IMG/VR virus record: IMGVR_UViG_3300022602_000024
Span: 248,001-312,000 of that record
DNA: 64,000 bases
Strand: one strand, 5' to 3'
The position numbers and the translations under genes are program-made. The notes below the pieces were generated by a model that made no database searches, was not told the DNA's origin, and worked only from the letters and a program-made list of their open reading frames with translations. This document shows, one piece after another, positions 17,726-41,162 of this stretch. The first letter of the stretch is position 1. Each line of letters begins with the position of its first letter.

Positions 17726-18694
17726 TTATGTTGGGTTAGCAAGTTCCGGGAATACAGTACGCCAGTTAGTGCCTCTGCGTTTATCGCATTTGTCTAAAAA
17801 ATCAAGTGCTTTTTGTTTGTTTTTATACCCTGAGGAAAATATACCCATAACAGGTTGTTGTCTATGTTCGATTTTATCTCCAAGTCTGTTTTCGTTAAAA
17901 TTACTAACCAGCCACAAATTTAGATTATCAAGATTTGCTTGATTTAAAATACCCACAGATGTATTAACGTTAAACATACAATTTACAGGGCTATTATCAA
18001 TGTACCATTGTAAATTATCCGTTACCTGATTCCAGATAGCAGGAAATCTTTGGTACTCAAATCTTTCTCCTATGTCATCAATGCTAAAATCAAGTTGAAC
18101 TAATTTAAATTTACTCCACAAATCTAATAATTCAGCCGATGGCAAAATAGTTCCATTGGTATTATAATCTAGTTCAACTTGTGATTTATGAGGAATTGTC
18201 TGTAAAAAAGTTATATGTTCTTTACTAAGCAATGGTTCGCCACCATTAAAATGAATTAGCCTCAGAGAGCTTGTGTCAAGAGTTTTCCAGAATTGATTTA
18301 CGGATAATTTTTTAATTGGCAAATTTAATTCTTGTTTCCAAGAACTGCTATTTTGCGGACCGCATATTACGCATCTTAGGTTACATGTGTCCCCGGTCCA
18401 ATAGTCTATTTTTGCCAACTCAACATCAGTATTGGTTAAATTTTGACTTTTATACCAGTTGTTTACATTTATTCTTCGGCTGGACCAACCAGACTCTTCT
18501 GTAGATTTACAGGCGCTACATGAACTTGGAAAATTTCCAGTTAGCCATGTTGTTCTTACTTCATTTAAAAACGAATCTTGGTGGAAATTAATGGTATCGG
18601 CTGTATTAGCAGGAGATAAACAACAAGTAGAAAAAGATTGTTGATTATTTTGATACACTATGTTTAAATTTTTAAATGCATCGTAACAAATCAT
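17726..18694 (-). CDS. Radical SAM protein with twitch-like N-terminus
   Basis: CC...CSAC, CNLRCVIC, FNGGEPL, YNTNGT, FSIDD and YQRFP. Confidence 0.9.
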   Translation of the reverse strand: MICYDAFKNLNIVYQNNQQSFSTCCLSPANTADTINFHQDSFLNEVRTTWLTGNFPSSCSACKSTEESGWSSRRINVNNWYKSQNLTNTDVELAKIDYWTGDTCNLRCVICGPQNSSSWKQELNLPIKKLSVNQFWKTLDTSSLRLIHFNGGEPLLSKEHITFLQTIPHKSQVELDYNTNGTILPSAELLDLWSKFKLVQLDFSIDDIGERFEYQRFPAIWNQVTDNLQWYIDNSPVNCMFNVNTSVGILNQANLDNLNLWLVSNFNENRLGDKIEHRQQPVMGIFSSGYKNKQKALDFLDKCDKRRGTNWRTVFPELANPT

Positions 18695-20124
18695 AATCCG
18701 CTTTTTAATCCTGCTAGCATCTGCTTGAGTTTGGTACTTTGTGCATCTCCTGTGACTCTAGGTGCACCACCGGGTTCGATATCCAAGGGATCTGGTATGC
18801 CTGCTTTGAGTGTGGGCTTTTCCCATGTAGATGTTTGTGTTTTGATTTGATTCATGATACTGGTCACTTTAGGAGGGCCATTGCCAGTATCGTTAGAATC
18901 TAACCCAGGATCAGTAATACGCATAGTTTCAATGTTGTATTCCAAATCAATCTTTTGTCCCACGCCTGTACTGTTACGACTTTTCATACACTGAATTTGA
19001 TAGCGTCCACGCTCACGCATTGCACGACTGGTAAAGATACCAAACACATTATCAGCAGTATTAATCTTACTGATACCACCCGAAATATGACTATGATCAA
19101 ATTCAGGTTCATCAACAGCACTACGATTCAACTGACTTGCAGTTACCATCAAGATGCCTAGTTCTTTGGCCAAGTTACGCAGTTCTTCTGACACATACTT
19201 GTCCTTAACAAACAAGTCATTGGGACTTACTTTGGCACTGACTGGCATCAACAAGTCCAGATAGTCTACCATCATAAAGTCAACCTTACGTCCTGTTTGT
19301 ATTTGATATTCTTTTAAGAAACTGCGAATGTCGTTGATATTGCTCTGTGCCGGTAGTGCTTTGACTTGATATGTGCCGGACTTTTTGCCCACCATCTTGA
19401 CCTTAAGTTCTGTTGTTTCAATGTCCTTGCGAATGTCTTTGGTACTCATGCCTGCCAACATGGCATCAGTTCTCAGTGCAGTCATTTCTTCACTTAACTC
19501 TAAACTGATATACACACCGTGTAAGCCTGCTTGCACCCAACTCAGTGCAATGTTCATCATCACTAGAGACTTGCCTGATCCTGATCCGCCAGCAAAGATG
19601 TTTAGTTCACCTCTACTGAATCCACCGTACAACAATCTATCCAGTTGTGGCCAACCTGTACTTACTTGCCCGCCCGAATTAAAATACTTGTTGATACGTG
19701 CCGCAGGATCTGCAAAGTAATCTGTACCTAAGTCTTTGGTTAACGATATCTGCACCGCGTCTTTGATCAATTTTTCTACAGGATCGTAGTCGCCTTTTTC
19801 TAGCAAGTCTGCTGCTTTTAAAATTGCACGTTCCAGTTCCTGCCTACGTGTAAACTGTTCAAACTCATCTGTGAACCAACCAGTGGGCAAAGCAGTAGTT
19901 TCAACTGGTTTTAATTGAACACCATTGGTTGCATTGACTTGTTCAAATGTAGGAAGTGTATTGTATTTGCTGCTGTACTCAGCAATAAACTTAGCAGTTT
20001 CTCTAAGACTGCGATCAAAGTTTTCAGGGTTGTAAATGTTTTGCACACGCACAAATTCTTGTGCGTCACTCATCATGGTTTCTAATAATAATTTTTGTAA
20101 GTCTGCGGAGTATTCTTTTGTCAT
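18691..20124 (-). CDS. DnaB-like replicative helicase (T4 gp41-like)
   Basis: Walker A GGSGSGKS, ISLELSE, MVDYLDL, TASQLNRSA and MKSR. Confidence 0.95.
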   Translation of the reverse strand: MTKEYSADLQKLLLETMMSDAQEFVRVQNIYNPENFDRSLRETAKFIAEYSSKYNTLPTFEQVNATNGVQLKPVETTALPTGWFTDEFEQFTRRQELERAILKAADLLEKGDYDPVEKLIKDAVQISLTKDLGTDYFADPAARINKYFNSGGQVSTGWPQLDRLLYGGFSRGELNIFAGGSGSGKSLVMMNIALSWVQAGLHGVYISLELSEEMTALRTDAMLAGMSTKDIRKDIETTELKVKMVGKKSGTYQVKALPAQSNINDIRSFLKEYQIQTGRKVDFMMVDYLDLLMPVSAKVSPNDLFVKDKYVSEELRNLAKELGILMVTASQLNRSAVDEPEFDHSHISGGISKINTADNVFGIFTSRAMRERGRYQIQCMKSRNSTGVGQKIDLEYNIETMRITDPGLDSNDTGNGPPKVTSIMNQIKTQTSTWEKPTLKAGIPDPLDIEPGGAPRVTGDAQSTKLKQMLAGLKSGL

Positions 20125-20753: not shown

Positions 20754-21289
20754 TTAAACATCAACTTTATTGTTTTTGCCCATATCATATGTGTTTTAAC
20801 TCCTGGATGAGAAGAACTTACATCACTGTCAATTTGTGGCATTAGATTTATTGCATTGGGATATTTTTTACCTTGGCTTATGTGTTTTATGTTAATATTA
20901 AATTTTTCAACTTCTTTAATTAACTCTGATATATCTTCTTGACCTGGACGGTCAACCCAAAAAAAGATTATTTTAGTGTTATGATAGTTTGTAGATGTTA
21001 TAAAGTTTTTTAAATTTACAATGCTGTCTCTATTTAAATAATTGCCAGCTAATCCGTAGTTATGTGCATTGGGGAAATAAGATACCATTGTTTTATCTTC
21101 TGGTACTCCGATACCAAATACAGTGCTAGCACCAAAAAATGCAAAATCTGGCAACCAGGTGTAGTCTACTGAGCTTCTAAATCCCTGATTATTTAGCTTG
21201 TATGTTATTAAGCCAGTTTGATCTTTTCCCCATTTATTTACTGTTTGCCCACGAAGTTCAAATAATGGTTTATTGACATTATCAATCAT
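20750..21289 (-). CDS. SGNH-hydrolase-like protein
   Basis: NNQGFR, AFFGASTVFGIGV, NYGLAG and D...HPG. Confidence 0.65.
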   Translation of the reverse strand: MIDNVNKPLFELRGQTVNKWGKDQTGLITYKLNNQGFRSSVDYTWLPDFAFFGASTVFGIGVPEDKTMVSYFPNAHNYGLAGNYLNRDSIVNLKNFITSTNYHNTKIIFFWVDRPGQEDISELIKEVEKFNINIKHISQGKKYPNAINLMPQIDSDVSSSHPGVKTHMIWAKTIKLMFK

Positions 21290-22328
21290 GTGCTAGTTTC
21301 TTCTTCTTTAACTCAATTTTTAATCTACTGGTTTCTTTGTAATGCAGAATGGTTTTTAAAACAAACAATTTGCCATAACGTTCCACTGCGGCACTGACAT
21401 CTTTGACATCATCTTCCCACTCAGGGAAACTCACACTCCATCCATATTCTACAGCATCATCAACTAACCGTGCCCCAGCCCGATCTCGATCGGGCACTAG
21501 GATAACTTCACGTGCTAGACTATCAATAATGTCGGCTTGTTGTTCATTGCATTGATTACTTAGTATAGCAACACCATCAATGGCCATGGCATCAAATGGT
21601 CCTTCAACCACAATCACAAACTTTGCATCTGTGGGTTGCAGATCTATGTTAAACACATAGTTAGGTTCGTGACTGTTAAAGTACTTGGGTTTAACATAAG
21701 GATCAAATGCTCTTGCAGTATAACCAATGGTTTTGTTCTTCCAAGTAAAAGGAACAATCACACGTTTGTTCAAGTTGTATTGCGATTCCGGAGTCCACAT
21801 TAGATTGTATTTGATCATATCAATCTCACGGTCCGCGGTGTACATGACTGCTGAGTGATAATCTGCTGGTACATTGTATACATCAGGATTTACTGCACCT
21901 AGGGTATAAAAAGTTTCCCATCCAGTGAAGTTCATTGCTGACTCTGGCAAGGGTCTTGGCTTGAACTCTACTTCTAGTCGTGCTTCTTCTACAAATGTTT
22001 CTGGTGCTACTAGATCTTTAACACGAATGGCTTCAATGACCAGGCGTTTGACTTCTGTTTCCGCGGCACCCAACCACGACAATAGTTTTCGAAACTTATA
22101 AGTTAAGTGGCGTCCAGGAACATAACTGGCTTTGAAGTTGCAGTTAAAGCAATGATAACTTACTCCTCCGTCGGGATTGGCTACTAAACCACCACGGCCA
22201 CGGGTATCTGCTGATTCACCGTTGTGATGACAACAAGGTGCATTAAAACTGATCCATCCGCTTGTGCTGTTGGTCTTCCTTTTATTAGGAAGCAACTGCA
22301 TTACAGAATCTTGAATACTATTAAACAT
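21282..22328 (-). CDS. DNA primase (zinc finger plus TOPRIM)
   Basis: APCC...YHCFNC zinc motif, PKY, VVEGPFDA, PDRDRAG and KDV. Confidence 0.92.
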   Translation of the reverse strand: MFNSIQDSVMQLLPNKRKTNSTSGWISFNAPCCHHNGESADTRGRGGLVANPDGGVSYHCFNCNFKASYVPGRHLTYKFRKLLSWLGAAETEVKRLVIEAIRVKDLVAPETFVEEARLEVEFKPRPLPESAMNFTGWETFYTLGAVNPDVYNVPADYHSAVMYTADREIDMIKYNLMWTPESQYNLNKRVIVPFTWKNKTIGYTARAFDPYVKPKYFNSHEPNYVFNIDLQPTDAKFVIVVEGPFDAMAIDGVAILSNQCNEQQADIIDSLAREVILVPDRDRAGARLVDDAVEYGWSVSFPEWEDDVKDVSAAVERYGKLFVLKTILHYKETSRLKIELKKKKLAHD

Positions 22329-22367
22329 CTTAGTAGTATACACTACTTTTTGGATTAAATCAACAGG

Positions 22368-23839: not shown

Positions 23840-24558
23840 ATGCCGTACCTTGTTCTGATTGAGGCATGGTTTTGTGCTATTTCTGCGGCCAACAATGCCC
23901 GACTGTAGACTGCCACTACACTGATATCACCATACCAGTAGTTGTCACCATATGCTACATTTTCGCCACCATTGCTGACCCATTGTGCTAGTGTCTGTCC
24001 TGTGGCACTATACACCGACTGTCCGTTAAAATAGCCCGTCATATTTCCACTACTGTCTTGAGTGACACCCACTGTAAACCATTGCCCAGTTGTCAACGTT
24101 AGAGGATTTGACACTATAGCACCACTTCCAAAACTGCCGTGTATCTCGTAAACTCCCGAACTGGGACTATAGATATAGGTATTGAAGTTTCTGGTACCAG
24201 TTGGGGTACCAAACAAACAACGATAAAGTCCGCTACCAAAACTGGCATTCATTCTTGCCGCAACAAATACAGTCTTACCTGTGTAGGTGGTGTTGTACTT
24301 GCCGGTGGGAGTACTGGCCAGCTGTGTACCGGCACCATTAAACGAAAAATAACTAGCGGCACCAGCACTGGTAAAAGGTGGACTGCCAGTGAATGTGGCG
24401 TTGTTGGTATTTGAGCTTAAATCAGTCCAAGTTGCACCTGATCCTGCGTAACTGGCAGTTTGCCCAGCATCTAGGTACAGCAATGCGTTGGTTTTAACAA
24501 ACGGTTGTTGATCAATTACATACCCAACGTTGTAAAGTGTGGCACCTTTGATTATCAT
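23836..24558 (-). CDS. LamG/concanavalin-A-like domain protein
   Basis: LYLDAGQTASYAGSGATWTDLS and VYSRALLAAEIAQNH. Confidence 0.87.
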   Translation of the reverse strand: MIIKGATLYNVGYVIDQQPFVKTNALLYLDAGQTASYAGSGATWTDLSSNTNNATFTGSPPFTSAGAASYFSFNGAGTQLASTPTGKYNTTYTGKTVFVAARMNASFGSGLYRCLFGTPTGTRNFNTYIYSPSSGVYEIHGSFGSGAIVSNPLTLTTGQWFTVGVTQDSSGNMTGYFNGQSVYSATGQTLAQWVSNGGENVAYGDNYWYGDISVVAVYSRALLAAEIAQNHASIRTRYGI

Positions 24559-27500: not shown

Positions 27501-30500
27501 TATATTCTTGCTTCTGGTGGTTGTCCTGCACCTGTATAGGTGTATAAGTCAATAGCAGTACCAGCACCAGCTTGTCCGCCAGTGTTGACCAAACTCAATA
27601 CACTGGCCACGTTGCCAGTATTGGCCACTGTAATATTCAGTGGTGTTGCGTAATACAAATTACTAGCAGCCGCACCAATAAACACATTACTGGTTGTGAC
27701 AATATTGGATGAGATACCATTGCTTAAATAACTAGCAACATTGGTGTTACTGTATGTGCTTCCTTGTGGATTAGCAACCAAATAAGCAGCCACATTACTA
27801 TTGCTATAGAATGTTTGTGTTGTTAGGTATGCAGCAACATTGGTATTTGAGTAGGTGCCGCCTATACCAGTCAAAATACTGACACCATTGGCATAATTAT
27901 AACTGTTGCTATAAATGCCATTAGACACAATCATTGAGCCGTTGCCGTACAAGGATGCTATGTTGGAAGTACCAGCATACCATTTGTAGCCAAATGAATT
28001 GGTGGCTTGCGGAATACTGAACCAAGTAAATCCCGACTCAATGCCAACGGCATAGTCAACATTGGTGCTATTAACTTGTGGCCAAAGAATAAGTTTGCTG
28101 CCAACACTACTGGTTGTGAATGTGGGAGTACCAAATCCACTGGCAGTCCAACTGATGTTGCCAGTGAGACTGTTCAATGATGGTGTGGCCGAAATTCCTG
28201 ACAGTATGTTGACGCCATTGGCATAGGTGAATTTGTTTGCCGATACACTATTCACCACAGTAACATTGTTGGCAAACCAAGCATTTTGTGTGTAGCCCAC
28301 AAGTTCAAATATGCTGGCTCCGCCAGTTTGTCCCACTGTGAATCCATCGGGACCTGCTTGTCCTTGTCCAACCACAACATCTACAGTGGCTTGGGCTGTG
28401 GTTTTTGTATAGGCGCCAAGACCGTAACCAATTCTCCAGTTTTGATCTGTTGTTCTGAAATCCAACCAACTGCCAATTGATAGTCCAACATTGCCTGTTG
28501 TGATGTTGCCCAACAAGTACGAGGCAACATTGGCATTGGCATAACTGCTGGTTCCAAAATTTAAATTAGCGTATGTGTAGAAACTTCCAATATTGGCCTG
28601 TAGTGTCGTAATATTAGAACTGAATGCAGCATCATTTGCTTGTATACTAGTAATAATACTAGACGTTGGCAGGTATTGTGCAACCTGTAAGTTACCGTAA
28701 GTAATAATAGGACTGTATCCACCAATTACTTGAATGTCAAACCATTGATTTGATATAGTATTATTAGATAAAGAACTACCTGATGCTGAATATAATTGAA
28801 GTTTAATATTAGCTGTTGAGCTTGTAGTAAGTATTGCTTCAGCAGTAGGAGATCCAGATCCATATGTAAGCCCAGCTGAAGTTTGCGGGACCAATACTGG
28901 ACTACCTATTACTGCACCATTACTAGAAAATACCCATTGTACAAAAGGTTGGCCAAGATTATTGGTGACTCCAGCACTTAAATCTCCTATAGCACCCATT
29001 AATCTATATGTTTTGCCAGCTTGTAAAGTAATATTTCCCGAATTACTATCATAAGAAATATCACTACCTGCAATATTATCTATACCTGAAAATAGTATAG
29101 TAAAGGTACCAGTCCCACTTAAACTTTGTGTTGTGTTTGTTCCATGAGCATAACTTGCAACTACCCCGGTATTAACATATGGTAATCCATTTGCATAGAA
29201 TAACCCGTTTGTATAAAGATTACCAAAGTTACCGCTATACGTTGACAAATATGCATTAACTTGTGTATTGCCATAATTACTACTTGTAAATGGTGTGCCA
29301 TTAGCATAGAAGAATCCTGCAGCTAACACATTGCCAGCAGTGACATTACCACTATGACCCACATTGCCTGCAAAGTAACTGTCGCCAACTACACCCAGTC
29401 CACCTCCGGCAACCACCAGAGTTTGTGAGTTGGTACCAGCAACGTTTCCTGTACCAATTGCGCCAACTGTGGCTTGAGCAGCAGTGATGGTAAATGCAGT
29501 GGGAGTTGAATTATTGTTGATTCTAAAAAACAAAGAACCTGAACTTGCAGCATTTAACCAAGTATTAGTTCCGTTGACCAAAATACTATAGTTACCATTG
29601 GCAGGTGTAATTGCAGTTGAATACAAAGCTGCATAACTACCGCCGCCAGTCCAAGGTTGTAGTGCAATACCTTGTGTGCCTGTACCGCCTTGTAGTGCTC
29701 CAGTTGTTATCACACTACCAGCATACAAGTTTCCGGCAACGCCTACACCACCAGCAACTTGTAGAGCACCTGTTGTTGTGCTGGTGCTGGTAGTGGTTTG
29801 TGCCAATATCAAACCAACATTGTTTTTAAAACGTCCTTGATAGTTGCTGGTTGTACTAAATCCACCTGTGGTAAACACAATGTCATTTGGTCCACCAGTA
29901 CCCAGTATCAAATTACCATTGGTGTTTGCAGTTCCTTGCACATATAGATATCCATCAAGTGCACGATTAAGTTCATTGCCAGTGCCGCCAACAAACCCAC
30001 TGCTGTTGATACCCATATCAATGTAACCAGCACCAGCGGAGCCAGTATCAGCAGTAGCCACATAATCAGTGCTGGCATTGATGCCTGAATTGATATTTTG
30101 ATGATTTACTTGTGCATAACCATTGAAGTTGGTTGAGTTTTGTAATACCGTTTGTGGCTGATAATTATAACCAGAAAGAATACCTGCGTATAGTGCACCA
30201 AAACCTGCGGCGTTACCTTGGAACGTACCAGTAGCAATAGTAATACTATTAACATTACCAACATAATTAATGTTGCCTGTTACTGTTAAATTTCCAGCAG
30301 TCAGATTACCAGCATAAGTCGGCAGATACGTTGACAAATATGCCGACACATTGGCATTGGTATATGAACCGTTCTGTAATGTAGCGACGAGTACATTAGC
30401 CGCCGACACGTTGGCGTTAATGGTATCAATTAATGTTTGTTGCGCACCAGCATTTGCAGTCAATGATGTAGTAAATGAATCCACATAGGTCTTCATTGCT

Positions 30501-31102
30501 GAATTTGCAGTGACTATGGCCAAGTTGGCAGCAGTCACATTGGCATTTATATTAGTAATACTGTTAGTAATAGCACCTATTGCACTGCCTTCGGCAGCTA
30601 AGTTAGCGGCAATCTCTCCTAGTGTATCCAAAGTACCCGGAGCACTGTTGATCAAGTTGTTGATTGCAGTACTGATTTGGTAGTCAGTGTAGCCTTTTAG
30701 AGCAGTATTGGCTGTAATAATGGCTGCATTAGCAGCCAAGATATTTGCATTTATAGCCGAAATAGTAGCGTCATGCGGCAAATATACTGCCACATTGGCA
30801 TTGCCGTAAACCAAATTCTGTAATTCTTCTAAGTTTACATTGGCAAAAAATGATTCAAGCTGGGTAATATTGCCTGTGATACCTGCTATGTTGGCTATTT
30901 CGGTTTGTAATGTAGCAATGGTATTGTTGAGAGTGTTGACATTTGCACCAATTTGGTGTCCACCTTGTGTGACACCATCTTGTACATATACTGAATTGTC
31001 ATCTGTGTTTAATATCAACTCACCGTGAGGACCGGTATATGTACTAATCGTCAGAGTATTACCGCGTTTAATTAGAATTTGTTTTATATTGAGATTAGAC
31101 AT
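24560..31102 (-). CDS. Giant tail fibre / adhesin (2180 aa) with C-terminal L-type lectin-like domain
   Basis: N-terminal IKRG...GELILNTD...QDGVTQGG; APGTLDTLGEIA fibre motif; Gly/Asn/Thr-rich repeats; GADG motif near the C-terminus. Confidence 0.88.
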   Translation of the reverse strand: MSNLNIKQILIKRGNTLTISTYTGPHGELILNTDDNSVYVQDGVTQGGHQIGANVNTLNNTIATLQTEIANIAGITGNITQLESFFANVNLEELQNLVYGNANVAVYLPHDATISAINANILAANAAIITANTALKGYTDYQISTAINNLINSAPGTLDTLGEIAANLAAEGSAIGAITNSITNINANVTAANLAIVTANSAMKTYVDSFTTSLTANAGAQQTLIDTINANVSAANVLVATLQNGSYTNANVSAYLSTYLPTYAGNLTAGNLTVTGNINYVGNVNSITIATGTFQGNAAGFGALYAGILSGYNYQPQTVLQNSTNFNGYAQVNHQNINSGINASTDYVATADTGSAGAGYIDMGINSSGFVGGTGNELNRALDGYLYVQGTANTNGNLILGTGGPNDIVFTTGGFSTTSNYQGRFKNNVGLILAQTTTSTSTTTGALQVAGGVGVAGNLYAGSVITTGALQGGTGTQGIALQPWTGGGSYAALYSTAITPANGNYSILVNGTNTWLNAASSGSLFFRINNNSTPTAFTITAAQATVGAIGTGNVAGTNSQTLVVAGGGLGVVGDSYFAGNVGHSGNVTAGNVLAAGFFYANGTPFTSSNYGNTQVNAYLSTYSGNFGNLYTNGLFYANGLPYVNTGVVASYAHGTNTTQSLSGTGTFTILFSGIDNIAGSDISYDSNSGNITLQAGKTYRLMGAIGDLSAGVTNNLGQPFVQWVFSSNGAVIGSPVLVPQTSAGLTYGSGSPTAEAILTTSSTANIKLQLYSASGSSLSNNTISNQWFDIQVIGGYSPIITYGNLQVAQYLPTSSIITSIQANDAAFSSNITTLQANIGSFYTYANLNFGTSSYANANVASYLLGNITTGNVGLSIGSWLDFRTTDQNWRIGYGLGAYTKTTAQATVDVVVGQGQAGPDGFTVGQTGGASIFELVGYTQNAWFANNVTVVNSVSANKFTYANGVNILSGISATPSLNSLTGNISWTASGFGTPTFTTSSVGSKLILWPQVNSTNVDYAVGIESGFTWFSIPQATNSFGYKWYAGTSNIASLYGNGSMIVSNGIYSNSYNYANGVSILTGIGGTYSNTNVAAYLTTQTFYSNSNVAAYLVANPQGSTYSNTNVASYLSNGISSNIVTTSNVFIGAAASNLYYATPLNITVANTGNVASVLSLVNTGGQAGAGTAIDLYTYTGAGQPPEARIYSIDNGDYSANIQFATKTPGASNNALVTRLTITSAGNVIAPGNIIAANFYGPASGLTGLTYSQAGNIYGTQPNVTLQAGSYNWIFDNTGNLTIPTTGNILYANGTVFTSGSGGGTTYSNANVVAMLSANSIVALGNVNTYPTQANITQLFVGNNTTISTGTGTNLSTTQILNNAYFGSNGAMFIRNTYSNGAGQFYIDGGSFYWNGQGSGTANAVAGMGTRMALTSTALTTYNSVGITSAGAVTGVGFTSTAGLVLNTIGTITTNQTSAAIFNGTATTISMGGAATTINLGTTTAAAASNVFVANAVGTSNGNLTVRAFGTYNQLSTYTGAGGYNSPPYNNQSLTGGSGTGMTASYGATGGYPNSYVVTNPGTGYKNGDILTLPGGLGATVILTNYNPNRVSSSLLTGLADYVFGLDGNLALPANVNIISNGSIILSSVGGSANITVGNVISNNHLFANGVNILNSITTVSNGTSSLSFATSGGNAVVQIGGVSTATFSQSQINVIGNVIASANVQAANIIGTQYGNSIGTSATYTGNVTANYFVGNGAALTGISSVGNIYGTQPNVTLVSGSYNYVFDTTGNLTMPVNGDLVMNTSGTIGTVVGTNANITVNPDGTGQFVVTSITPAWFGNTVTVLGNLNAGNIIGTQYGNSIGTSATFSGNVTAGNLVTSGYGQFTGAFNESTTISGVFVGNSGTTGAQSPRVGFFNGNTTQNWEIDNYNGAFRWFTPGVTRMNLDGNTNQLTVYGNVSSTGNIIAAGASGPKTRFLWDTWQANSTSALSSFTPSGTIGGNATWDSTQAYGLKLTTTSTTQSGYINWNSSTINYNYDMVITASIGASGGTGADGQWIYFGSNAAITGNPGNTNTLGGIAVMNHYYSSASQFEVYVNGTQTNIPYIGNGNYVTSGVTLWNASYTSFYNLTLKIRKIQNGNRMLEVYLNEIYQGSVNIGSWTPAGNYFGVAAYTGGSTAQNWVRQLKIDW

Positions 31103-31642: not shown

Positions 31643-32017
31643 ATGGATGACCACTACACACAATTATTAGCCAAATACCCGTATCTAAGCCACATTACAT
31701 ACGGAGGCAACGATTACATAGGGATTATACAAAATTCCGACGAGGTCATCACTACCTTGTATGATTTTGGTGCGCTGAAAGACGGGGATATGAAACGAGT
31801 ATTCTTAGAATTAGGGGAAACCTGGTGGTGGGAAAGCAACAGGCTCATTCCCATCAACGTGTTCTTGAAGAAGGACTGGAGTGTTTTTAGAATATGTCTA
31901 CGTACTATGAACAGCAAAGACGTAGAAATTGTAATGGGCCCTTATGTGAGCCTAAAGGAAATGGCTACTAAACGTAGCAAACGTAAGTCAATTACCTTGG
32001 TTAGAAAAGTCAGCTGA
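31643..32017 (+). CDS. Conserved phage hypothetical protein
   Basis: 124 aa, YIGIIQN and WWWESNRLIPINVFL. Confidence 0.75.
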   Translation: MDDHYTQLLAKYPYLSHITYGGNDYIGIIQNSDEVITTLYDFGALKDGDMKRVFLELGETWWWESNRLIPINVFLKKDWSVFRICLRTMNSKDVEIVMGPYVSLKEMATKRSKRKSITLVRKVS

Positions 32018-32600
32018 CATCACTGCGGAGTTGTTCGCAGATCAAGTTCATGTGAACTGCCACAAGATGCGCATAAGCCAGGCTGTGCGACTTCTTAAAA
32101 TAGTATTCATCATCTGTTTTGTTCCAAACAGTTTCTGCCACTTCTCGCCAAGTCTTACCAACTAAATGCCGCTTGCCAGGACGTATTAGTGCCAAGAACA
32201 TGGCCATCCTGGGAATACTATTCACTGGCTCAGGACATCGCATCAGCAAGTCATGATGATTGCCAATGTGTATAACAAGACTACAAAATTCAGGATCCAA
32301 CAACAACTCCCACATGGGCTCTTGTGCCATTAGATCTGTTAAGTGTTGCTCGCTCTTTATCTGTGTATATAAAGACACATTCAAAAAGTCCAGTTTGGCG
32401 TAACCTAGATCCTCTGCAGTCTCGTAGTTGATACTAGCAATGCCCAAGAATGGATCTACGGGAATGTCTGTGGCGTATACTCCAGTATTGTGCCGAACTA
32501 ACCGTCCGTCACGTAAGATGCTTGCTGGCGTAACCGACAACAAATCAATGGCCTGTTGCCTGTTTCCAAAGTCAATGTCAATGTCTGACTTAAACTTCAT
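32010..32600 (-). CDS. Miniature DNA polymerase III alpha (DnaE)-like catalytic domain
   Basis: SDIDID, RHNTGVY, AKLDFL, ALIRPG and YYFKKSHSLAYA match the DnaE palm/finger motifs in order. Confidence 0.85.
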   Translation of the reverse strand: MKFKSDIDIDFGNRQQAIDLLSVTPASILRDGRLVRHNTGVYATDIPVDPFLGIASINYETAEDLGYAKLDFLNVSLYTQIKSEQHLTDLMAQEPMWELLLDPEFCSLVIHIGNHHDLLMRCPEPVNSIPRMAMFLALIRPGKRHLVGKTWREVAETVWNKTDDEYYFKKSHSLAYAHLVAVHMNLICEQLRSDVS

Positions 32601-33522
32601 ATATTGTCTCTATATATTTTATAATAGTATTGGCTATGTTCTTATTTGATTCTACACCGGGATGGAGTTTATCTGTCCCAAAATCTACTAGATATTCTGC
32701 CATCCAACTTGCTGGTATAAATTCTTTCATATCATAAAAGTAAGTCTGATCCGATGATGAATATATATTGTTATCTTTATAATTAATTAACCAAAAAACT
32801 AATTTTAATTTTTTTGCACGTGCAATATTGACCATTGATCTTATTTTAACTAATAGTTCATAAAATAAAAAGTCTTTATGGTAAACATCTAACATTGATT
32901 TTGTGGGATGTCGAGCAAACATAAGTTTAATTAATTGCTGAGAGTTTTCTGTACAATAATGAATACGGTCTAATCCTGTAAATTGTACTACAACCAACTG
33001 CCCCGGGTTCATTTCAAGTCTGCTAAATTTATCAAATATTAAATTATTGCTCCCCCCGGGTTCAGATAAATTTAATACTGTTTTATTAAAATAATTTGCA
33101 ACAATATTCGAATACATTGCTTGTCGGTTAGGTAATGCAATCCCATAGGTAAAACTACACCCTAAAAATATCATTTGATCATTTGTAACTGATATTTTTT
33201 TACCCCACTGATAAACATCAAAGCTCATTTGATCTAGATTCTTTACAGTTTTATATTTTAAATTAAAGTCTTTAAGCCAATTTAAAAAGTTGTAGTATTC
33301 AGCATCACTATAAAATTCATCAGGACTGCATTCTGCCCAGTAAACTTCATCTGCTGACTTTAATACCATTTCCAATTCATTTAAGTCGGGGATATCTTGT
33401 ATTGATGTATGCCCCACAACTTCGTTGTTATCAACGGATGTAATTAAATTACTATGAGGTAGTTCAAGTCTTTTGTAATAATTTGCAGTATTATTATGTG
33501 CACTACCAATGATAATTTTCAT
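32590..33522 (-). CDS. SGNH-hydrolase-like protein
   Basis: FLGCSFTYG, NLSEPGGSN and D.LHPG; AT-rich. Confidence 0.7.
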   Translation of the reverse strand: MKIIIGSAHNNTANYYKRLELPHSNLITSVDNNEVVGHTSIQDIPDLNELEMVLKSADEVYWAECSPDEFYSDAEYYNFLNWLKDFNLKYKTVKNLDQMSFDVYQWGKKISVTNDQMIFLGCSFTYGIALPNRQAMYSNIVANYFNKTVLNLSEPGGSNNLIFDKFSRLEMNPGQLVVVQFTGLDRIHYCTENSQQLIKLMFARHPTKSMLDVYHKDFLFYELLVKIRSMVNIARAKKLKLVFWLINYKDNNIYSSSDQTYFYDMKEFIPASWMAEYLVDFGTDKLHPGVESNKNIANTIIKYIETIYEV

Positions 33523-34202
33523 AGTCCTGCTTTCTGTAATATATCTTTAACCCATTCCGTATCAGCCATGTAATCACGAAACTTTTGTTGCCAATAATCG
33601 GGATCAATCCACGGCAATATGATTGCTAGTTGTTCTTCGGACAAGGACTCAAGAAATTCCACACCAGATACACAATTGAATAAAACCCAAGGACTAATCC
33701 TCCCAGTTGTAATATGGTGACAAATGCGATTGCTGTTACCAAACCTAAAATAGTCTCGATAACCGTTTTTAAGATCCGGGTGATCATCTGCATAACTTTC
33801 CATTTCCTTTAAGGTACGCTCCATGGCGTCTTGTACTGCTTCACGTTTGACATAATCGTGTAGCCATTGCTCGTATAAGGTGTCTTTACACCAGTAGTCT
33901 AGTTTTTTATTGTTCTTTAACAACCAGTCTGTAAAACTGTTGGTGTTAACTGCTCTGATAGACACAAGGTATCTACCATATTTTACAAAAGCATTGTAAT
34001 AAGAACTTGTAACAAAATCTTCGTAGCTCTTTAACTTGGCCGAACCCTGTGTGGTTTCATAAAAACGCAAGTATGCACGCAGTCCAAATTGTACGCCTGT
34101 TTCTTTTTCCTGTTGCCATCTGCGTTTTTGTTCGCAGAGATGTGCAGTCAACGTAGACTCTTTACTATAAGATTTGTTACAGTATCGGCAAGTAAAACTC
34201 AT
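33519..34202 (-). CDS. Conserved protein with N-terminal C2H2-type zinc finger
   Basis: FTCRYCNKSYSKESTLTAHLC. Confidence 0.75.
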   Translation of the reverse strand: MSFTCRYCNKSYSKESTLTAHLCEQKRRWQQEKETGVQFGLRAYLRFYETTQGSAKLKSYEDFVTSSYYNAFVKYGRYLVSIRAVNTNSFTDWLLKNNKKLDYWCKDTLYEQWLHDYVKREAVQDAMERTLKEMESYADDHPDLKNGYRDYFRFGNSNRICHHITTGRISPWVLFNCVSGVEFLESLSEEQLAIILPWIDPDYWQQKFRDYMADTEWVKDILQKAGL

Positions 34203-34669
34203 AGTTCTTTTTTAATGTCCCGATCTTCCATGCCCATTGCACGTGCATAGGCTTTGAGTTCTTTGGTATCATTGATTTCACTCATCAATCTCAAATCATC
34301 TTCTTTCAAGTGAGGATACAAGTTGCGCAGGAACTTGATTGCTTTGTTATCAGTGGTCTTTTTCTTTGCAGCCAACCAAGGATGATATTTAACTCCCATA
34401 CCGGGACTTACAGTGGTAGCCAACAACCATTGTAGTTTTTTATGCTTGCTACCACTGATGTCAAAGAAGTGTTTGTTCAAGCGTTCGTTGGTAGCACGCA
34501 CATACCACTCTTGAAACTCAGGGCCAGCATCTACTGTGGCTCCCCAGCGAATCATCAAGAATGGCGCAAACTTTTTCTTTTCGTCTTCGGACAAGTCGTC
34601 AAAGAACGCTCTGTTTTTGCGATCAAACTGTGCCATTTCGTTTTTGATGTTTAATTTATCTTCGCTCAT
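34199..34669 (-). CDS. Putative clamp-loader small subunit-like protein
   Basis: KKFAPFLMIRW...QW.L; size and replication context resemble gp62; start MSEDKL. Confidence 0.5.
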   Translation of the reverse strand: MSEDKLNIKNEMAQFDRKNRAFFDDLSEDEKKKFAPFLMIRWGATVDAGPEFQEWYVRATNERLNKHFFDISGSKHKKLQWLLATTVSPGMGVKYHPWLAAKKKTTDNKAIKFLRNLYPHLKEDDLRLMSEINDTKELKAYARAMGMEDRDIKKEL

Positions 34670-34989
34670 ACTGGATGGTACATAAGTGGTGGTTCTTGTT
34701 CTTTGCTTAAATGATATATAACTATAGCACGTTCTAGGGCTTCTTGCAAGGCAGGATTGTCCTTTGCAGCACGACGTATATTGCCCCAAAGTTGATCTTC
34801 TCTCATGTGTTCGTACAAGGGTCTGCCGTCTGAGGTGCGTTTGTCATAATCAATCTTGTGCCCATTTATGGGATCATAGTCCCACCCAATGGCTTGTCTA
34901 GTAGATGGGTCTGCGCCTATTTCCCTAGCATAAGTCACACCATCTGCTTGTTCGTAAACATAAACTGCGCCAGGTTTAAGTGTTCCCAT
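34666..34989 (-). CDS. Hypothetical protein
   Basis: Start MGTLKPGAVYVYE directly after the upstream stop. Confidence 0.65.
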   Translation of the reverse strand: MGTLKPGAVYVYEQADGVTYAREIGADPSTRQAIGWDYDPINGHKIDYDKRTSDGRPLYEHMREDQLWGNIRRAAKDNPALQEALERAIVIYHLSKEQEPPLMYHPV

Positions 34990-35575: not shown

Positions 35576-36394
35576 ATGTATTTAAGTAACAAGTACTCCA
35601 AGTGCTATGATAACATCATTCATCGAGCAAAGTCAAGAGATTTACCAAAAGAAATATATACCGAGAAGCATCATATTATCCCACGAAGTCTTGGCGGGAC
35701 CAACAATGTTGCAAATTTGGTCAGATTGACCGCAAAAGAGCATCGACTTGTTCACATTCTTCTCCCTAAGATGACCATTGATCCTGCACACACAAAGAGT
35801 ATGTGGTATGCGTTATGGATGATGCTACGTACTAAAAATAAAGATCAACAACGGCAAGTTTCAAAAGGCAGAGCATTTGAACTTGCTAAAATACAAGTCG
35901 CTGCTGCATTGTCACATCTACATAAAGGTAAAGTAGTTTCGCCCGAAACTCGTAATAAACTATCTAAATCTCGCATAGGCAAGCCAGGTCCAAATAAAGG
36001 CAAATCTATGTCTCAAGAACAAAAAAACAAATTATCGATTGCTAAAAGGGGAATTCGGCAATCGCAGGAAACTATAGCAAAACAAGTTGCATCTCGTGCT
36101 GGCCACAAACATTCAGAAGAAACTAAACAAAAAATCTCAGAATCCAATAAAGGCAAAATTGTTGTTATTACTAAGGAAACTAAACAAAAGATTTCTAACG
36201 CACTCAAAGGGAGACCATCACCTCTTAGAGGGAGACCATCACCTCTTAAAGGAAAACAAGCATCCGCCGAACTAATACAACGGTATAAAGATGGACATAA
36301 AAATAGAGAAATTGTAACCTGTCCACATTGCAATAAGACTTTAACAAAACAGAATTATAATAGATGGCACGGAGACAGATGTAAAAACAAATAA
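35576..36394 (+). CDS. Free-standing HNH homing endonuclease with NUMOD3 repeats
   Basis: YTEKHHIIPRSLGGTN...NLVRLTAKEH...H; repeated HSEETKQKIS; C-terminal CPHC...RWHGDRCK; antisense to its neighbours. Confidence 0.92.
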   Translation: MYLSNKYSKCYDNIIHRAKSRDLPKEIYTEKHHIIPRSLGGTNNVANLVRLTAKEHRLVHILLPKMTIDPAHTKSMWYALWMMLRTKNKDQQRQVSKGRAFELAKIQVAAALSHLHKGKVVSPETRNKLSKSRIGKPGPNKGKSMSQEQKNKLSIAKRGIRQSQETIAKQVASRAGHKHSEETKQKISESNKGKIVVITKETKQKISNALKGRPSPLRGRPSPLKGKQASAELIQRYKDGHKNREIVTCPHCNKTLTKQNYNRWHGDRCKNK

Positions 36395-36396
36395 TT

Positions 36397-37857
36397 CTAT
36401 TGCCAATTTGCTTTTTCTATTGTGTACGGATAGTTGGCTTCCGTATAAAATTTCTTTCTACTGGTCAAGTGTCTTTTTGCAAACTTGCAGGTGCTGGTGA
36501 TGTCCCAGATTTGGACAAAATCTTTATCTTCCGCTTTCCTAATGCCGCGCCCAATTGATTGTATAACTCGTACAAAGCTCTTTCCGGGTTCAACAAGAAC
36601 CAAATTAAAAATACGTGGAATATTAATACCCACAGCGGCCACACCATAAGTCGCCACAATAATCTTGTCAGATGATATCGCCACCGCGTCATATTCTTCC
36701 TTTCTATCTTTTGCTTTAGTTGACCCCGATACAAATACTGCACGATCTCCTAGTCGTTCTACTAGAAGTTTACCAGTGGCAATACGATCTACCAAGACCA
36801 AGGTATTGCCTGTTTCGTTAACTCTATTAATTAGGCTCTGCATGTAATCTAATCTACCATCTGTTTCTAACAGGTATTTTACTTCTGTTTGATAGTCTTT
36901 GTACTCTACATGGTCAACTAATTGTACTATATTAATGTGGCAGTTAGCAAGATGTCCGACTTCTTGCAAGTCGCTGGCACTGAGTTGTCCCACTACCGGT
37001 CCTAGGCTACAAAATATACTGACCTTGGCATAGTCTTCTTTAGGTATTGTTCCTGTTAGTCCCCAACGAATAGGAACATGAGCAAATACTCCTGTCAATA
37101 GAGTCTTCAGTGCATCTGCTTTGGCCATGTGTACTTCATCGACCATGATGCAGACTACACCTTCAATGAAGTCACCAATGTCCACTTCCGCTTCGGCATT
37201 CTTTGTATTCTTTAGCATGTTGTTTAGACTTTGCCAAGTACATATTGTATGTGTCTTGTTGTATTCTTTACGATCGCCGAAGTAAACTCCCACATCAAGT
37301 CCAAGATTTTTGTAGTCATCTTCAGTTTGTGTAACTAGACTTTTGTTGGGCACAATGATAATACTGCGCCCATATGGTTCCACACTCTTACTTAAAGCTG
37401 CGGTCATAATAGTCTTACCTGCACCGGTAGCGATCTCCTGCAGACTCTGAGGATTGTTAAAAAAGTTATTTAAGATAGGAACTTGATAATCACGCAACAT
37501 AATGGGTTCGCCAGCTCGTGGATGGCCTTTGGGCCATGTCTTGTCAGCAAACATATCTTCAGTTGCTACAGGAAATTCAAATGTGGTTCGATAATCCCGG
37601 GTATCATCTATTTCGATGTCATAGCCTTCAGCATCCAGGATAGGAAGTATATCAGGCAACAAATTGATATACGTGCTGCCCCCAAGTTGGAAGAATGCAA
37701 CCTTGCCATCCCACCGGCCTAATCGCACACTTGGTTGAAAACGTGCTCCGGGGATTTCGTATTTGAATTTGTTGGACAAAGTTTTTCTAGTAGAAAGATC
37801 CAGTCCTTCTATCTTGACATTAACTTCATCTCTTATAATCAATTTACAATAGGTCAT
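36397..37857 (-). CDS. uvsW: UvsW-like superfamily 2 DNA helicase
   Basis: LRDYQ, ATGAGKT, DEVH, GLTGT and QSIGRGIR. Confidence 0.92.
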   Translation of the reverse strand: MTYCKLIIRDEVNVKIEGLDLSTRKTLSNKFKYEIPGARFQPSVRLGRWDGKVAFFQLGGSTYINLLPDILPILDAEGYDIEIDDTRDYRTTFEFPVATEDMFADKTWPKGHPRAGEPIMLRDYQVPILNNFFNNPQSLQEIATGAGKTIMTAALSKSVEPYGRSIIIVPNKSLVTQTEDDYKNLGLDVGVYFGDRKEYNKTHTICTWQSLNNMLKNTKNAEAEVDIGDFIEGVVCIMVDEVHMAKADALKTLLTGVFAHVPIRWGLTGTIPKEDYAKVSIFCSLGPVVGQLSASDLQEVGHLANCHINIVQLVDHVEYKDYQTEVKYLLETDGRLDYMQSLINRVNETGNTLVLVDRIATGKLLVERLGDRAVFVSGSTKAKDRKEEYDAVAISSDKIIVATYGVAAVGINIPRIFNLVLVEPGKSFVRVIQSIGRGIRKAEDKDFVQIWDITSTCKFAKRHLTSRKKFYTEANYPYTIEKANWQ

Positions 37858-40003: not shown

Positions 40004-40102
40004 TCAACTACATACCAACAAAAACGCTAGTAAGAAAGCAATAATGGGATGACCAAAAACTATGAACAATAGTACAGCAAGCCATCCCATATCTTCCTCC
40101 AT
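40004..40102 (-). CDS. 32-aa membrane microprotein; absent from the ORF track
   Basis: MEEDMGWLAVLLFIVFGHPIIAFLLAFLLVCS; TAATG-coupled to the ATPase. Confidence 0.55.
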   Translation of the reverse strand: MEEDMGWLAVLLFIVFGHPIIAFLLAFLLVCS

Positions 40103-41130: not shown

Positions 41131-41162
41131 GTTTACTGCTCCTGTTTTGTTAATATACATAT

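What the first reader, a model, noticed from the sequence alone, without database searches (positions are those of the whole stretch)
32010..32600. A 196-aa minimal C-family (DnaE-like) polymerase
Seen: all three catalytic aspartates in DnaE-type motifs (SDIDID, KLDFL), plus H..GV, ALIRPG and Y.F.KSH..AY, in the correct order within 196 aa. There is no PHP, beta-binding, HhH or OB domain, and most thumb/finger sequence is missing. Established: DnaE proteins are normally over 1000 aa. The flanking genes are not the missing parts and no intein motifs are visible. Inference: either one subunit of a split multi-gene polymerase or a stand-alone minimal nucleotidyltransferase with a new role such as priming, repair or signalling. 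It sits in the same gene block as UvsW, a zinc-finger protein and a clamp-loader-like protein.
Basis: partly seen in the sequence, partly recalled or inferred. Interest (0 to 1): 0.75.

Follow-up and report, generated by a model that had tools for sequence, protein, structure and literature searches.

The report
Half of a split mini DnaE-like polymerase
This 196-residue jumbo-phage protein is the metal-binding half of a very small DnaE-like enzyme whose nucleotide-binding half is encoded 115 kb away; the two-gene arrangement was predicted computationally in 2021, and I found no experimental test of it.

Summary
Window 32010-32600 (minus strand) encodes a 196-aa protein carrying the C-family polymerase motifs. 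D6, D8, K69, D71 and P141 are invariant in 89 diverse homologs. A family profile matches only Pol III alpha in the PDB. An AlphaFold2 model (pLDDT 96.4) aligns over 190 residues to Pol III alpha (Z 9.6; best unrelated chain Z 3.2).

It is not a polymerase on its own, because it lacks the G-R-G-S nucleotide-binding motif. That motif sits on a 172-aa protein at G000:C1:165330-165848, 115 kb away, which passes Pfam DNA_pol3_alpha and ends where this ORF begins (E. coli residues about 393/399). The two genes co-occur in jumbo phages and are always separate. They are predicted to bind each other (ipSAE 0.89, best control 0.01). Rare 375-376-aa proteins carry both halves fused.

The genome has an intact B-family polymerase. 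PHP, finger and HhH profiles found nothing, and a full-length DnaE profile found only these two genes. No intein is present.

Iyer et al. 2021 (PMC7824862) already described this split minimal Pol III in group 2.2 jumbo phages, so this is a new member of a known, biochemically untested kind. Its role is most likely short-patch DNA synthesis beside the B-family replicase; that part is inference.

The parts
32010..32600 (-). C-terminal (metal-binding plus mini-fingers) subunit of the split minimal Pol III alpha-like enzyme, 196 aa
   Evidence: ORF. phrog_11778, E 1e-60. Family profile hits only Pol III alpha in the PDB. AF2 model pLDDT 96.4. VIA Z 9.6 to 3e0d_A with 190 residues aligned; E. coli 2hnh 399-781 at Z 8.8.
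32571..32585 (-). Codons D6-I-D8-I-D10, the first two catalytic carboxylates (E. coli D401/D403)
   Evidence: D6 and D8 are invariant in 89/89 homologs and D10 in 88/89. Aligned to E. coli MPDFDVDF 399-405.
32481..32492 (-). Codons H37-N-T-G40 in the beta-hairpin that replaces the thumb
   Evidence: H37 in 88/89 and G40 in 87/89 homologs. Strands 24-30 and 33-42 are joined by a two-residue turn in the model. The correspondence to the DnaE H-x-x-G-V strand is my reading of the alignment.
32388..32396 (-). Codons K69-L-D71, the third catalytic carboxylate (E. coli K553/D555)
   Evidence: K69 and D71 are invariant in 89/89 homologs. Aligned to E. coli KFDFLGL.
32172..32183 (-). Codons R140-P141-G142-K143, a fingers motif (E. 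coli R-P-G, the last three residues of the stretch aligned up to 641)
   Evidence: R140 in 88/89, P141 in 89/89 and K143 in 82/89 homologs. Aligned to E. coli ALFRPG, which ends at residue 641.
32070..32096 (-). Codons K169-K-S-H172-S-L-A-Y176-A177, a fingers motif (the E. coli NKSHSAAYA stretch within 740-769)
   Evidence: K169 in 81/89, K170 as K or R in 86/89, H172 in 88/89, Y176 in 78/89 and A177 in 83/89 homologs. Aligned to E. coli 740-769. phrog_405 positions 772-809.
33519..34202 (-). C2H2 zinc-finger protein, a conserved upstream neighbour; role unknown, candidate accessory factor
   Evidence: phrog_11058, E 2.3e-56. zf-C2H2 E 1e-3, below the Pfam cut-off. Directly upstream on the same strand in 71 of 80 related loci. 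Also upstream in the distant locus L025.
31643..32017 (+). Small convergent gene overlapping the 3' end of the C-subunit gene by 8 nt; function unknown
   Evidence: phrog_11637, E 1.4e-33. Present on the opposite strand directly downstream in 79 of 80 loci. Also lies beside the fused form in L024 and in 121Q and Atu_ph07.
32590..33522 (-). 310-aa ORF inserted between the zinc-finger gene and the C-subunit gene; lineage-specific and not part of the enzyme
   Evidence: No PHROG match. Pfam gave only a sub-threshold RepL hit, E 0.12. Present in 2 of 80 related loci.
36397..37857 (-). UvsW-type helicase, part of the conserved replication block
   Evidence: Pfam UvsW_N 27.5 bits (cut-off 25.3), plus ResIII and Helicase_C. 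phrog_16, E 4.7e-73.
21282..22343 (-). DnaG-type primase, replication block downstream of the C subunit
   Evidence: phrog_47, E 1.6e-37. Toprim_2. Primase also follows the C subunit in 121Q and Atu_ph07.
18691..20124 (-). DnaB-like replicative helicase
   Evidence: phrog_19, E 3.7e-71. DnaB_C, E 6.9e-22.

Best explanation
The ORF encodes the C-terminal subunit of a two-gene, minimal C-family (Pol III alpha-like) nucleotidyltransferase of a freshwater jumbo myovirus.

Shown or computed:
- This subunit carries all three catalytic carboxylates (D6, D8, D71), K69, and a cut-down helical fingers module with the R-P-G and K-S-H..A-Y motifs.
- A separate 172-aa protein, encoded 115 kb away at G000:C1:165330-165848 (minus strand), supplies the first half of the palm with the invariant G-R-G-S-S loop.
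- The break falls between E. coli DnaE residues about 393 and 399.

Inferred:
- In Pol-beta-fold enzymes the G-R-G-S loop holds the triphosphate of the incoming nucleotide (established knowledge).
- The two chains associate without covalent joining into a roughly 368-aa enzyme that performs two-metal nucleotidyl transfer onto a 3'-OH.
- PHP, finger (PF17657) and HhH profiles found nothing in the genome; the thumb is replaced by a two-residue turn, and a full-length DnaE profile found no clamp-binding or OB part. It should therefore be weakly processive by itself and should work beside the phage's intact B-family replicase.
- Its most likely job is template-directed short DNA synthesis, such as primer extension, gap filling or recombination-dependent synthesis. 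I put about 0.55 on DNA-templated DNA polymerase activity specifically.
For: Identity of this subunit:
- phrog_11778, E 1e-60.
- Family profile hits only Pol III alpha in the PDB.
- Foldseek top 10 are all Pol III alpha, probability 0.80-0.99 (0.93 or more for the first eight).
- VIA Z 9.6, 9.4 and 8.8 to Taq, M. tuberculosis and E. coli Pol III alpha over 180-190 residues; the next unrelated chain is Z 3.2.
- AFDB and BFVD searches return only orthologs and DnaE-type polymerases among the confident hits.
- Catalytic residues are invariant.

The partner:
- Pfam PF07733 at 35.9 bits against a cut-off of 23.9, covering profile positions 23-94.
- phrog_11127, E 6.5e-42.
- Family profile matches E. 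coli 319-392.
- The model aligns E. coli 277-393 at Z 9.4-10.5.

The two work together:
- C and N subunits are found in 96 and 93 phage records with the same host make-up.
- Both are present in all 5 reference jumbo phages checked.
- Both are present in 4 of 5 large IMG/VR contigs; the exception is only 18% complete.
- The genes are always separate, 4 to 182 kb apart in the five reference phages and 115 kb here.
- Predicted complex ipSAE 0.89 against a best control of 0.01. That mark was reached by 58 of 80 solved complexes and 2 of 110 mismatched pairs. The G-R-G-S loop packs on the D-x-D and K-x-D strands.
- Natural fusions of 375-376 aa occur in three 90% clusters from separate assemblies.

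Selection:
- At least 7,900 clusters at 90% identity for each half.
- 22 synonymous against 6 non-synonymous among the 28 best-supported natural variants, none at an invariant residue.

Context:
- Conserved replication block.
- Intact B-family polymerase with exonuclease domain.

Literature: the same inference was made by Iyer et al. 2021, PMC7824862.
Against: - No biochemical or genetic data were found for any member of the family.
- No RNA run was listed for this gene.
- The complex score may reflect the model's memory of single-chain DnaE structures, so it shows likeness rather than binding (caveat stated).
- The thumb and about 100 residues of fingers (E. coli about 642-740) are missing. 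From memory, that region contributes to nucleotide and DNA contacts in Pol III, so template-directed synthesis is not assured.
- The window's own C subunit hits no Pfam family.
- No clamp-binding element or proofreading partner was found; there is no RNase_T-type exonuclease in this genome.
Confidence: 0.85

Rival explanations
1. The heterodimer forms, but it is not a DNA replication or repair polymerase. It would use the Pol-beta-type active site for another nucleotidyl transfer, for example untemplated 3' tailing, RNA or tRNA repair, RNA-primer synthesis or extension, or making or consuming a nucleotide signal in phage-host conflict.
For: Thumb, PHP, clamp-binding and about half of the fingers are missing. 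The phage already has a complete B-family replicase with exonuclease. Weak structural echoes of MenT and Cid1 nucleotidyltransferases appear below the Pol III hits.
Against: The conserved motifs outside the palm (R-P-G, K-S-H..A-Y) are specific to the C-family fingers and are nearly invariant. The MenT and Cid1 matches have probability 0.13 or less and TM about 0.2. The gene sits in a conserved block with UvsW, primase and DnaB-like helicase.
Confidence: 0.25
2. The 196-aa protein is a stand-alone minimal nucleotidyltransferase that works without the 172-aa protein.
For: It carries all three carboxylates and folds confidently on its own (pLDDT 96.4).
Against: It lacks the G-R-G-S triphosphate-binding loop, which is on the partner. 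The two genes co-occur strictly. Natural fusions exist. The predicted interface buries the D-x-D strand against the partner's G-R-G-S loop.
Confidence: 0.05
3. The two pieces are joined by a split intein, or by another joining event, into a conventional DnaE.
For: Split-intein DnaE is known in cyanobacteria (from memory).
Against: The N subunit aligns to DnaE through its last residues (E. coli 392/393). The C subunit aligns from residue 1-3 (E. coli 397-399). That leaves no room for intein halves. No PHP, finger or HhH domain exists in the genome, and a full-length DnaE profile found only these two genes, so no clamp-binding or OB part either. Even joined, the product would be about 368 aa. 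Contigs laid on the region show no joint linking the two loci.
Confidence: 0.01
4. It is a decaying remnant of a captured DnaE gene with no function.
For: It is very short compared with DnaE, and the gene is in pieces.
Against: Catalytic residues are invariant across homologs only 30-58% identical. There are thousands of clusters of near-constant length. Natural variants are 22 synonymous to 6 non-synonymous. The split site is the same in every lineage examined.
Confidence: 0.02

Closest known systems
Split minimal DNA polymerase III alpha of 'group 2.2' jumbo phages (Iyer, Anantharaman, Krishnan, Burroughs, Aravind 2021, Viruses 13:63, PMC7824862)
   Same: It has the same two-protein arrangement: an N-terminal NTP-binding unit and a C-terminal Mg2+ and template-binding unit. 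The genes are far apart, a family B polymerase is present, and other Pol III domains are absent. Atu_ph07, a group 2.2 phage named in that paper, holds proteins 46% (C) and 40-42% (N) identical; 121Q, which that paper does not name, holds proteins 42-44% identical. Both halves fall in the same PHROGs as the known phage proteins.
   Different: Nothing essential differs. This copy comes from an uncultivated 354-kb freshwater phage. It has a lineage-specific 310-aa ORF inserted just upstream. The fused 375-376-aa relatives, the conserved zinc-finger and convergent-gene neighbours, and the controlled complex prediction were not seen in the passages of that paper that I read.
Bacterial replicative C-family polymerases (DnaE / Pol III alpha, PolC)
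   Same: Same palm fold and the same catalytic D-x-D...K-x-D, G-R-G-S, R-P-G and K-S-H..A-Y motifs in the same order.
   Different: DnaE is one chain of 1000 residues or more; this enzyme is two chains totalling about 368. It has no PHP domain, no thumb (a two-residue turn instead), no counterpart of E. coli about 642-740 or anything beyond about 784, and no clamp-binding, HhH or OB part. Domain boundaries of E. coli DnaE are quoted from memory of Lamers et al. 2006.
Cyanobacterial split-intein DnaE
   Same: It is a C-family polymerase encoded by two distant genes.
   Different: In cyanobacteria the break lies in the fingers and intein halves splice the pieces into a full-length DnaE (from memory). 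Here the break lies in the palm just before the D-x-D strand, there is no intein sequence, and no full-length product is possible.
Other split enzymes of T4-like and jumbo phages (split family B polymerase of MIJ3/PA5oct; multi-piece RNA polymerases of phiKZ-like phages)
   Same: A single-chain cellular enzyme is encoded as separate polypeptides that are thought to assemble.
   Different: The MIJ3 family B polymerase split is described with an intein and a homing endonuclease between adjacent genes. Here the halves are tens to hundreds of kb apart, and the split site is the same in all lineages examined.

Membership tests
C-family DNA polymerase catalytic core (Pol III alpha / DnaE / PolC) | Pol-beta-like palm fold with Pol III alpha topology | tested here: met
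   AF2 model pLDDT 96.4. Foldseek top 10 are all Pol III alpha. VIA Z 9.6 with 190 residues aligned, against 3.2 for the best unrelated chain.
C-family DNA polymerase catalytic core (Pol III alpha / DnaE / PolC) | Three catalytic carboxylates (E. coli D401, D403, D555) | tested here: met
   D6, D8 and D71 are invariant in 89 homologs and align to the E. coli motifs.
C-family DNA polymerase catalytic core (Pol III alpha / DnaE / PolC) | G-R-G-S nucleotide-binding loop and first half of the palm on the same polypeptide | tested here: not met
   Absent from the 196-aa ORF. Present on a separate 172-aa protein 115 kb away: PF07733 35.9 bits, E. coli 319-392, Z 9.4-11.6.
C-family DNA polymerase catalytic core (Pol III alpha / DnaE / PolC) | PHP domain | tested here: not met
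   PF02811 finds nothing in the 98%-complete genome, while all 14 control genomes are detected.
C-family DNA polymerase catalytic core (Pol III alpha / DnaE / PolC) | Thumb domain between the palm strands | tested here: not met
   35 residues here span what takes about 122 residues in E. coli (417-539). The model shows a beta-hairpin, strands 24-30 and 33-42, joined by a two-residue turn.
C-family DNA polymerase catalytic core (Pol III alpha / DnaE / PolC) | Complete fingers domain | tested here: inconclusive
   The R-P-G and K-S-H..A-Y motifs are present, and 52 of 89 family members hit PF17657 weakly. The window's own protein has no Pfam hit, PF17657 finds nothing in the genome, and E. coli about 642-740 and everything beyond about 784 have no counterpart.
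C-family DNA polymerase catalytic core (Pol III alpha / DnaE / PolC) | Clamp-binding, HhH and OB C-terminal region | tested here: not met
   PF14579 finds nothing. The full-length phrog_405 profile matches only the two small genes.
C-family DNA polymerase catalytic core (Pol III alpha / DnaE / PolC) | Template-directed DNA polymerase activity | not testable with these tools
   Needs biochemistry. No experimental report was found.
Split minimal Pol III alpha of group 2.2 jumbo phages (Iyer et al. 2021) | Separate N (NTP-binding) and C (Mg2+/template-binding) proteins encoded by distant genes | tested here: met
   N subunit at G000:C1:165330-165848 and C subunit at 280010-280600, same strand.
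Split minimal Pol III alpha of group 2.2 jumbo phages (Iyer et al. 2021) | Accompanied by a family B polymerase, with no other Pol III domains | tested here: met
   896-aa ORF with DNA_pol_B plus exonuclease domains. No PHP, finger or HhH domain.
Split minimal Pol III alpha of group 2.2 jumbo phages (Iyer et al. 2021) | Orthology to the proteins of Rak2-like and Atu_ph07-like jumbo phages | tested here: met
   Full-length matches at 42-50% identity (C) and 39-47% identity (N), with the same PHROGs.
Split minimal Pol III alpha of group 2.2 jumbo phages (Iyer et al. 2021) | Jumbo genome with T4-type replication set (UvsW, DnaB-like helicase, primase) | tested here: met
   354,429-bp record. UvsW_N, DnaB_C and Toprim hits.
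Split-intein DnaE | Intein halves at the break, giving a full-length DnaE after splicing | tested here: not met
   Both chains align to DnaE up to their termini, so there are no extra residues for intein halves.

The most novel reading that the evidence does not exclude
The N+C pair, about 368 aa, could be a self-sufficient, template-directed DNA polymerase. That would make it by far the smallest C-family polymerase. It might act as a dedicated primer-extension or gap-filling enzyme that hands over to the B-family replicase, in the way Pol alpha does in eukaryotes or DnaE does for PolC in Bacillus (the comparisons are from memory). The always-adjacent C2H2 zinc-finger protein might serve as a DNA-binding accessory that stands in for the missing thumb.
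Probability: 0.3. Interest if true: 0.75.

Novelty: new member of a known kind. Interest (0 to 1): 0.45.

Why it matters
If the pair is active, it defines the minimal working core of the bacterial-type replicative polymerase: a palm plus a stub of fingers, split across two chains. That would make a small, tractable model for C-family catalysis and a test case for ideas on how Pol III arose. It would also mean a large, globally common group of jumbo phages runs two unrelated polymerase families side by side, which raises the question of how labour is divided between them. The family is very abundant in metagenomes and I found no experimental work on it. As a discovery it is not new, because the arrangement was published in 2021.

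Tried and rejected
- Pfam on the ORF alone gave no hit. Single-sequence search of the PDB gave only a chance hit, E 0.61. Family profiles were needed.
I rebuilt the alignment without them.
- I tried one alignment with the fused protein on top and both halves beneath it, so as to fold the fused form. MAFFT placed the N-subunit sequences under the C half. I discarded that alignment and folded the N subunit alone instead.
- I tested whether the 200-aa gene directly upstream of the C subunit in the nearest split relative (L025) is the N subunit, which would have been an adjacent-gene intermediate. It is not. It is the zinc-finger neighbour.
- I looked for an epsilon-type proofreading exonuclease, as annotated in Atu_ph07. 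This genome has none.
- I looked for transcription evidence. No RNA run was listed, and the PA5oct omics paper gives no gene-level statement in its main text.
- Megablast of 10 kb of the window against phage records found nothing.
Full report
**What the window is.** The window is G000:C1:248001-312000 of a 354,429-bp IMG/VR virus record estimated 98% complete. Near-identical sequence is held by freshwater and lake metagenomes from 2016 to 2023. It has no close DNA relative among deposited phages. Its proteins place it with the Rak2 / 121Q / PA5oct / Atu_ph07 type of jumbo myoviruses.

**The observation.** An ATG-started ORF of 196 aa lies on the minus strand at 32010-32600. It contains, in DnaE order, DIDID (6-10), HNTGV (37-41), KLDFL (69-73), ALIRPG (137-142) and YYFKKSHSLAYA (166-177).
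- Alone, the protein hits no Pfam family and nothing meaningful in the PDB by sequence.
- It matches phrog_11778 'DNA polymerase' at E 1e-60, and weakly matches full-length DnaE PHROGs at the K-S-H motif.
- The all-against-all representative search gave 397 relatives at 50% clustering, 247 of them below 1e-10.
- In an alignment of 89 of these, 30-58% identical to the query, D6, D8, K69, D71 and P141 are invariant. D10, H37, G40, R140, K143, K169 and H172 are conserved at 90% or more.
- A profile of that alignment matches only Pol III alpha chains in the PDB (E. coli, Thermus, M. tuberculosis; E 1.6e-5 to 1.4e-4). The match is colinear with E. coli 399-417, 539-641 and 740-769.
- Scanned one by one, 52 of the 89 members hit Pfam DNA_pol3_finger; no other family is hit by more than two.

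**Structure.** With an 84-row alignment, AlphaFold2 gives pLDDT 96.4 and pTM 0.89.
- Foldseek's first ten PDB matches are all Pol III alpha (probability 0.80-0.99, 0.93 or more for the first eight).
- VIA-align gives Z 9.6 (3e0d_A, model 1-194 on chain 458-841), Z 9.4 (M. tuberculosis DnaE1) and Z 8.8 (E. coli 2hnh, model 3-193 on 399-781). PolC-type entries follow at Z 6.5-6.8. The best unrelated chain is Z 3.2.
- AlphaFold DB clusters and BFVD return orthologs and DnaE-type polymerases.
- About 190 residues therefore cover what takes about 385 residues in E. coli.
- The alignment and the model show where the difference lies. The stretch between the D-x-D strand and the K-x-D strand is 35 residues here against about 122 in E. 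coli. In the model it forms a beta-hairpin (strands 24-30 and 33-42) with a two-residue turn, so the thumb is deleted.
- E. coli about 642-740 has no counterpart either, and the protein ends at about E. coli 784. The E. coli domain names are from memory of Lamers et al. 2006.

**The missing half.** Searching the whole genome with Pfam DNA_pol3_alpha found one place outside the window, over the curated cut-off.
- It is a 172-aa ORF at L002:1510-2028 (minus strand), which is G000:C1:165330-165848.
- It scores 35.9 bits against a cut-off of 23.9, on profile positions 23-94 of 260. It belongs to phrog_11127 'DNA polymerase', E 6.5e-42.
- Its last residues read G-L-G-R-G-S-S...E-E-F-L-K then stop. 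Its family profile aligns residues 99-171 to E. coli 319-392.
- Its model (pLDDT 87.2) aligns residues about 73-172 to E. coli 277-393, M. tuberculosis 307-413 and PolC, at Z 9.4-11.6.
- The window's ORF starts at E. coli about 397-399. The palm is therefore cut just before the D-x-D strand. The N piece has the triphosphate-binding G-R-G-S loop, and the C piece has all the metal ligands.
- Residues 1-72 of the N piece lie outside every Pol III match and vary among distant relatives.
- A full-length 1190-position DnaE profile finds only these two genes in the genome. PHP, finger and HhH profiles find nothing.
- The genome has an intact 896-aa family B polymerase with its exonuclease domain. It has no RNase_T-type exonuclease.

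**Do the halves work together?**
- Co-occurrence: the C piece is found in 96 phage records and the N piece in 93, with the same host make-up. Both are in each of five reference phages: Atu_ph07, 121Q, PA5oct, RsoM2USA and RAS14. Both are in four of five large IMG/VR contigs, and the exception is an 18%-complete fragment.
- Separation: in the five reference phages and this genome the two genes are on the same strand but apart. The distances are 4.2 kb (RsoM2USA), 14 kb, 31 kb, 43 kb, 115 kb (this genome) and 182 kb. In the large IMG/VR contigs they are about 41-44 kb apart, and about 237 kb in the near-complete one. The break is at the same place in all.
- Predicted binding: the complex scores ipSAE 0.89 in three runs, against 0.01 for the best of three controls. 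That mark was reached by 58 of 80 solved complexes and 2 of 110 mismatched pairs. My own alignments were used, so these counts hold only roughly. The interface puts N residues 133-146 (the G-R-G-S loop) and 169-172 (its C-terminus) against C residues 1-12, 65-75 and 169-172. Because the pair mimics one chain of solved DnaE structures, this shows likeness, not proven binding.
- Natural fusions: representative P0290 (375 aa) matches the C piece at residues 190-372 and the N piece at 15-180 (31% identity, E 4e-22). A ten-residue linker joins the halves. Two more clusters of 376 aa, 78-81% identical, come from other assemblies, and the ORFs are continuous on their contigs. The fused gene sits at the C locus, next to the same small convergent gene. 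Its nearest relatives, 51-59% identical, are ordinary split C pieces. The direction of change cannot be told without a root.

**Selection.**
The listed N pieces are almost all exactly 172 aa.
- Contigs from four lake metagenomes laid on the region show 28 well-supported differences inside the gene. Taken singly, 22 are synonymous and 6 are not. The six fall at residues 33, 36, 149, 150 and 194, none of them conserved.

**Context.**
- Across 80 IMG/VR loci with C pieces 53-77% identical, a C2H2 zinc-finger protein (window 33519-34202) lies directly upstream on the same strand in 71.
- A small convergent gene (31643-32017) overlaps the 3' end in 79.
- The ORF at 34199-34789 lies further upstream in 64.
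- The 310-aa ORF that separates the zinc-finger gene from the C piece here occurs in only 2 of the 80.
- The wider block holds a UvsW helicase (36397-37857; UvsW_N over the cut-off), a DnaG-type primase (21282-22343) and a DnaB-like helicase (18691-20124). The order is the same as in 121Q and Atu_ph07.
- For the ORF at 34199-34669, language-model look-alikes carry Pfam Phage_clamp_A (T4 gp62) in 11-13% of members.

**What is known.** Iyer et al. [quoted passage not shown] They note that it accompanies a family B polymerase, and they suggest a role in synthesis of one strand or in repair. RefSeq and PHROGs already label both halves 'DNA polymerase'. The Atu_ph07 paper noted a Pol III alpha gene. 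Four literature searches found no experimental work on the enzyme.

**Mechanism.** Shown or computed: the fold, the conserved active-site residues, the partner, co-occurrence, fusions, purifying selection, and the absence of the other DnaE domains. Inferred:
- the two chains assemble without covalent joining;
- they catalyse two-metal nucleotidyl transfer;
- the substrate is a primed DNA template, because the conserved non-palm motifs are those of C-family fingers and the genes sit among replication genes;
- the enzyme is poorly processive alone and works beside the B-family replicase.

I put 0.85 on the identity and two-subunit architecture, and about 0.55 on templated DNA synthesis as the activity.

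**Verdict.** The feature is a new member of a published but biochemically untested kind.

Noticed in passing
window 33519-34202 (-): A C2H2 zinc-finger protein (phrog_11058) lies directly upstream of the C-subunit gene in 71 of 80 related loci, and also in a distant lineage (L025). Its function is unknown. It is a candidate accessory of the mini polymerase.
   Followed up: partly
window 31643-32017 (+): A small gene (phrog_11637) converges on the C-subunit gene and overlaps its 3' end by 8 nt. The arrangement is kept in 79 of 80 loci, in 121Q and Atu_ph07, and beside the fused form. Function unknown.
   Followed up: partly
window 32590-33522 (-): A 310-aa ORF with no PHROG match, and only a sub-threshold Pfam RepL hit (E 0.12), is inserted between the zinc-finger gene and the C-subunit gene. 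It is present in only 2 of 80 related loci, so it looks like a recent insertion.
   Followed up: partly
window 35576-36394 (+): An HNH homing endonuclease (phrog_655, E 1.3e-47) lies on the opposite strand inside the replication gene block. It is present in 4 of 80 related loci and is probably a mobile insertion.
   Followed up: partly
window 34199-34669 (-): A small helical protein (phrog_11758). Its language-model look-alike clusters carry Pfam Phage_clamp_A (T4 gp62 clamp-loader small subunit) in 11-13% of members. The longer TTG-started frame to 34789 is probably not the real start.
   Followed up: partly
window 24560-31102 (-): A 2180-aa fibre-like ORF, rich in G, N, T, S and A with recurring short motifs, sits between the C-subunit block and the primase. 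Three smaller ORFs of 236-254 aa follow at 22368-24558. The two that were scanned (22368-23132 and 23836-24558) are similar to virion structural proteins (phrog_8510).
   Followed up: no
window 17726-18694 (-): A radical-SAM protein (phrog_14086, E 9e-14) lies next to the DnaB-like helicase gene.
   Followed up: no
window 40102-41160 (-): An AAA+ protein (phrog_1250, E 6e-83) with weak similarity to clamp loader and DnaC-like loaders. It is possibly the large clamp-loader subunit.
   Followed up: no
L002:667-1038 (-), G000:C1:164487-164858: A GroES-like co-chaperonin lies two genes downstream of the N-subunit gene. The same N-subunit / small gene / chaperonin order is annotated in PA5oct.
   Followed up: partly
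L024:519-1649 (+), L023:1066-2193 (+): Natural single-chain (fused) forms of the mini Pol III, 375-376 aa, occur on short metagenome contigs. In L024 the position that holds a 200-aa zinc-finger gene in the nearest split relative (L025) appears to be taken by the N half.
   Followed up: partly
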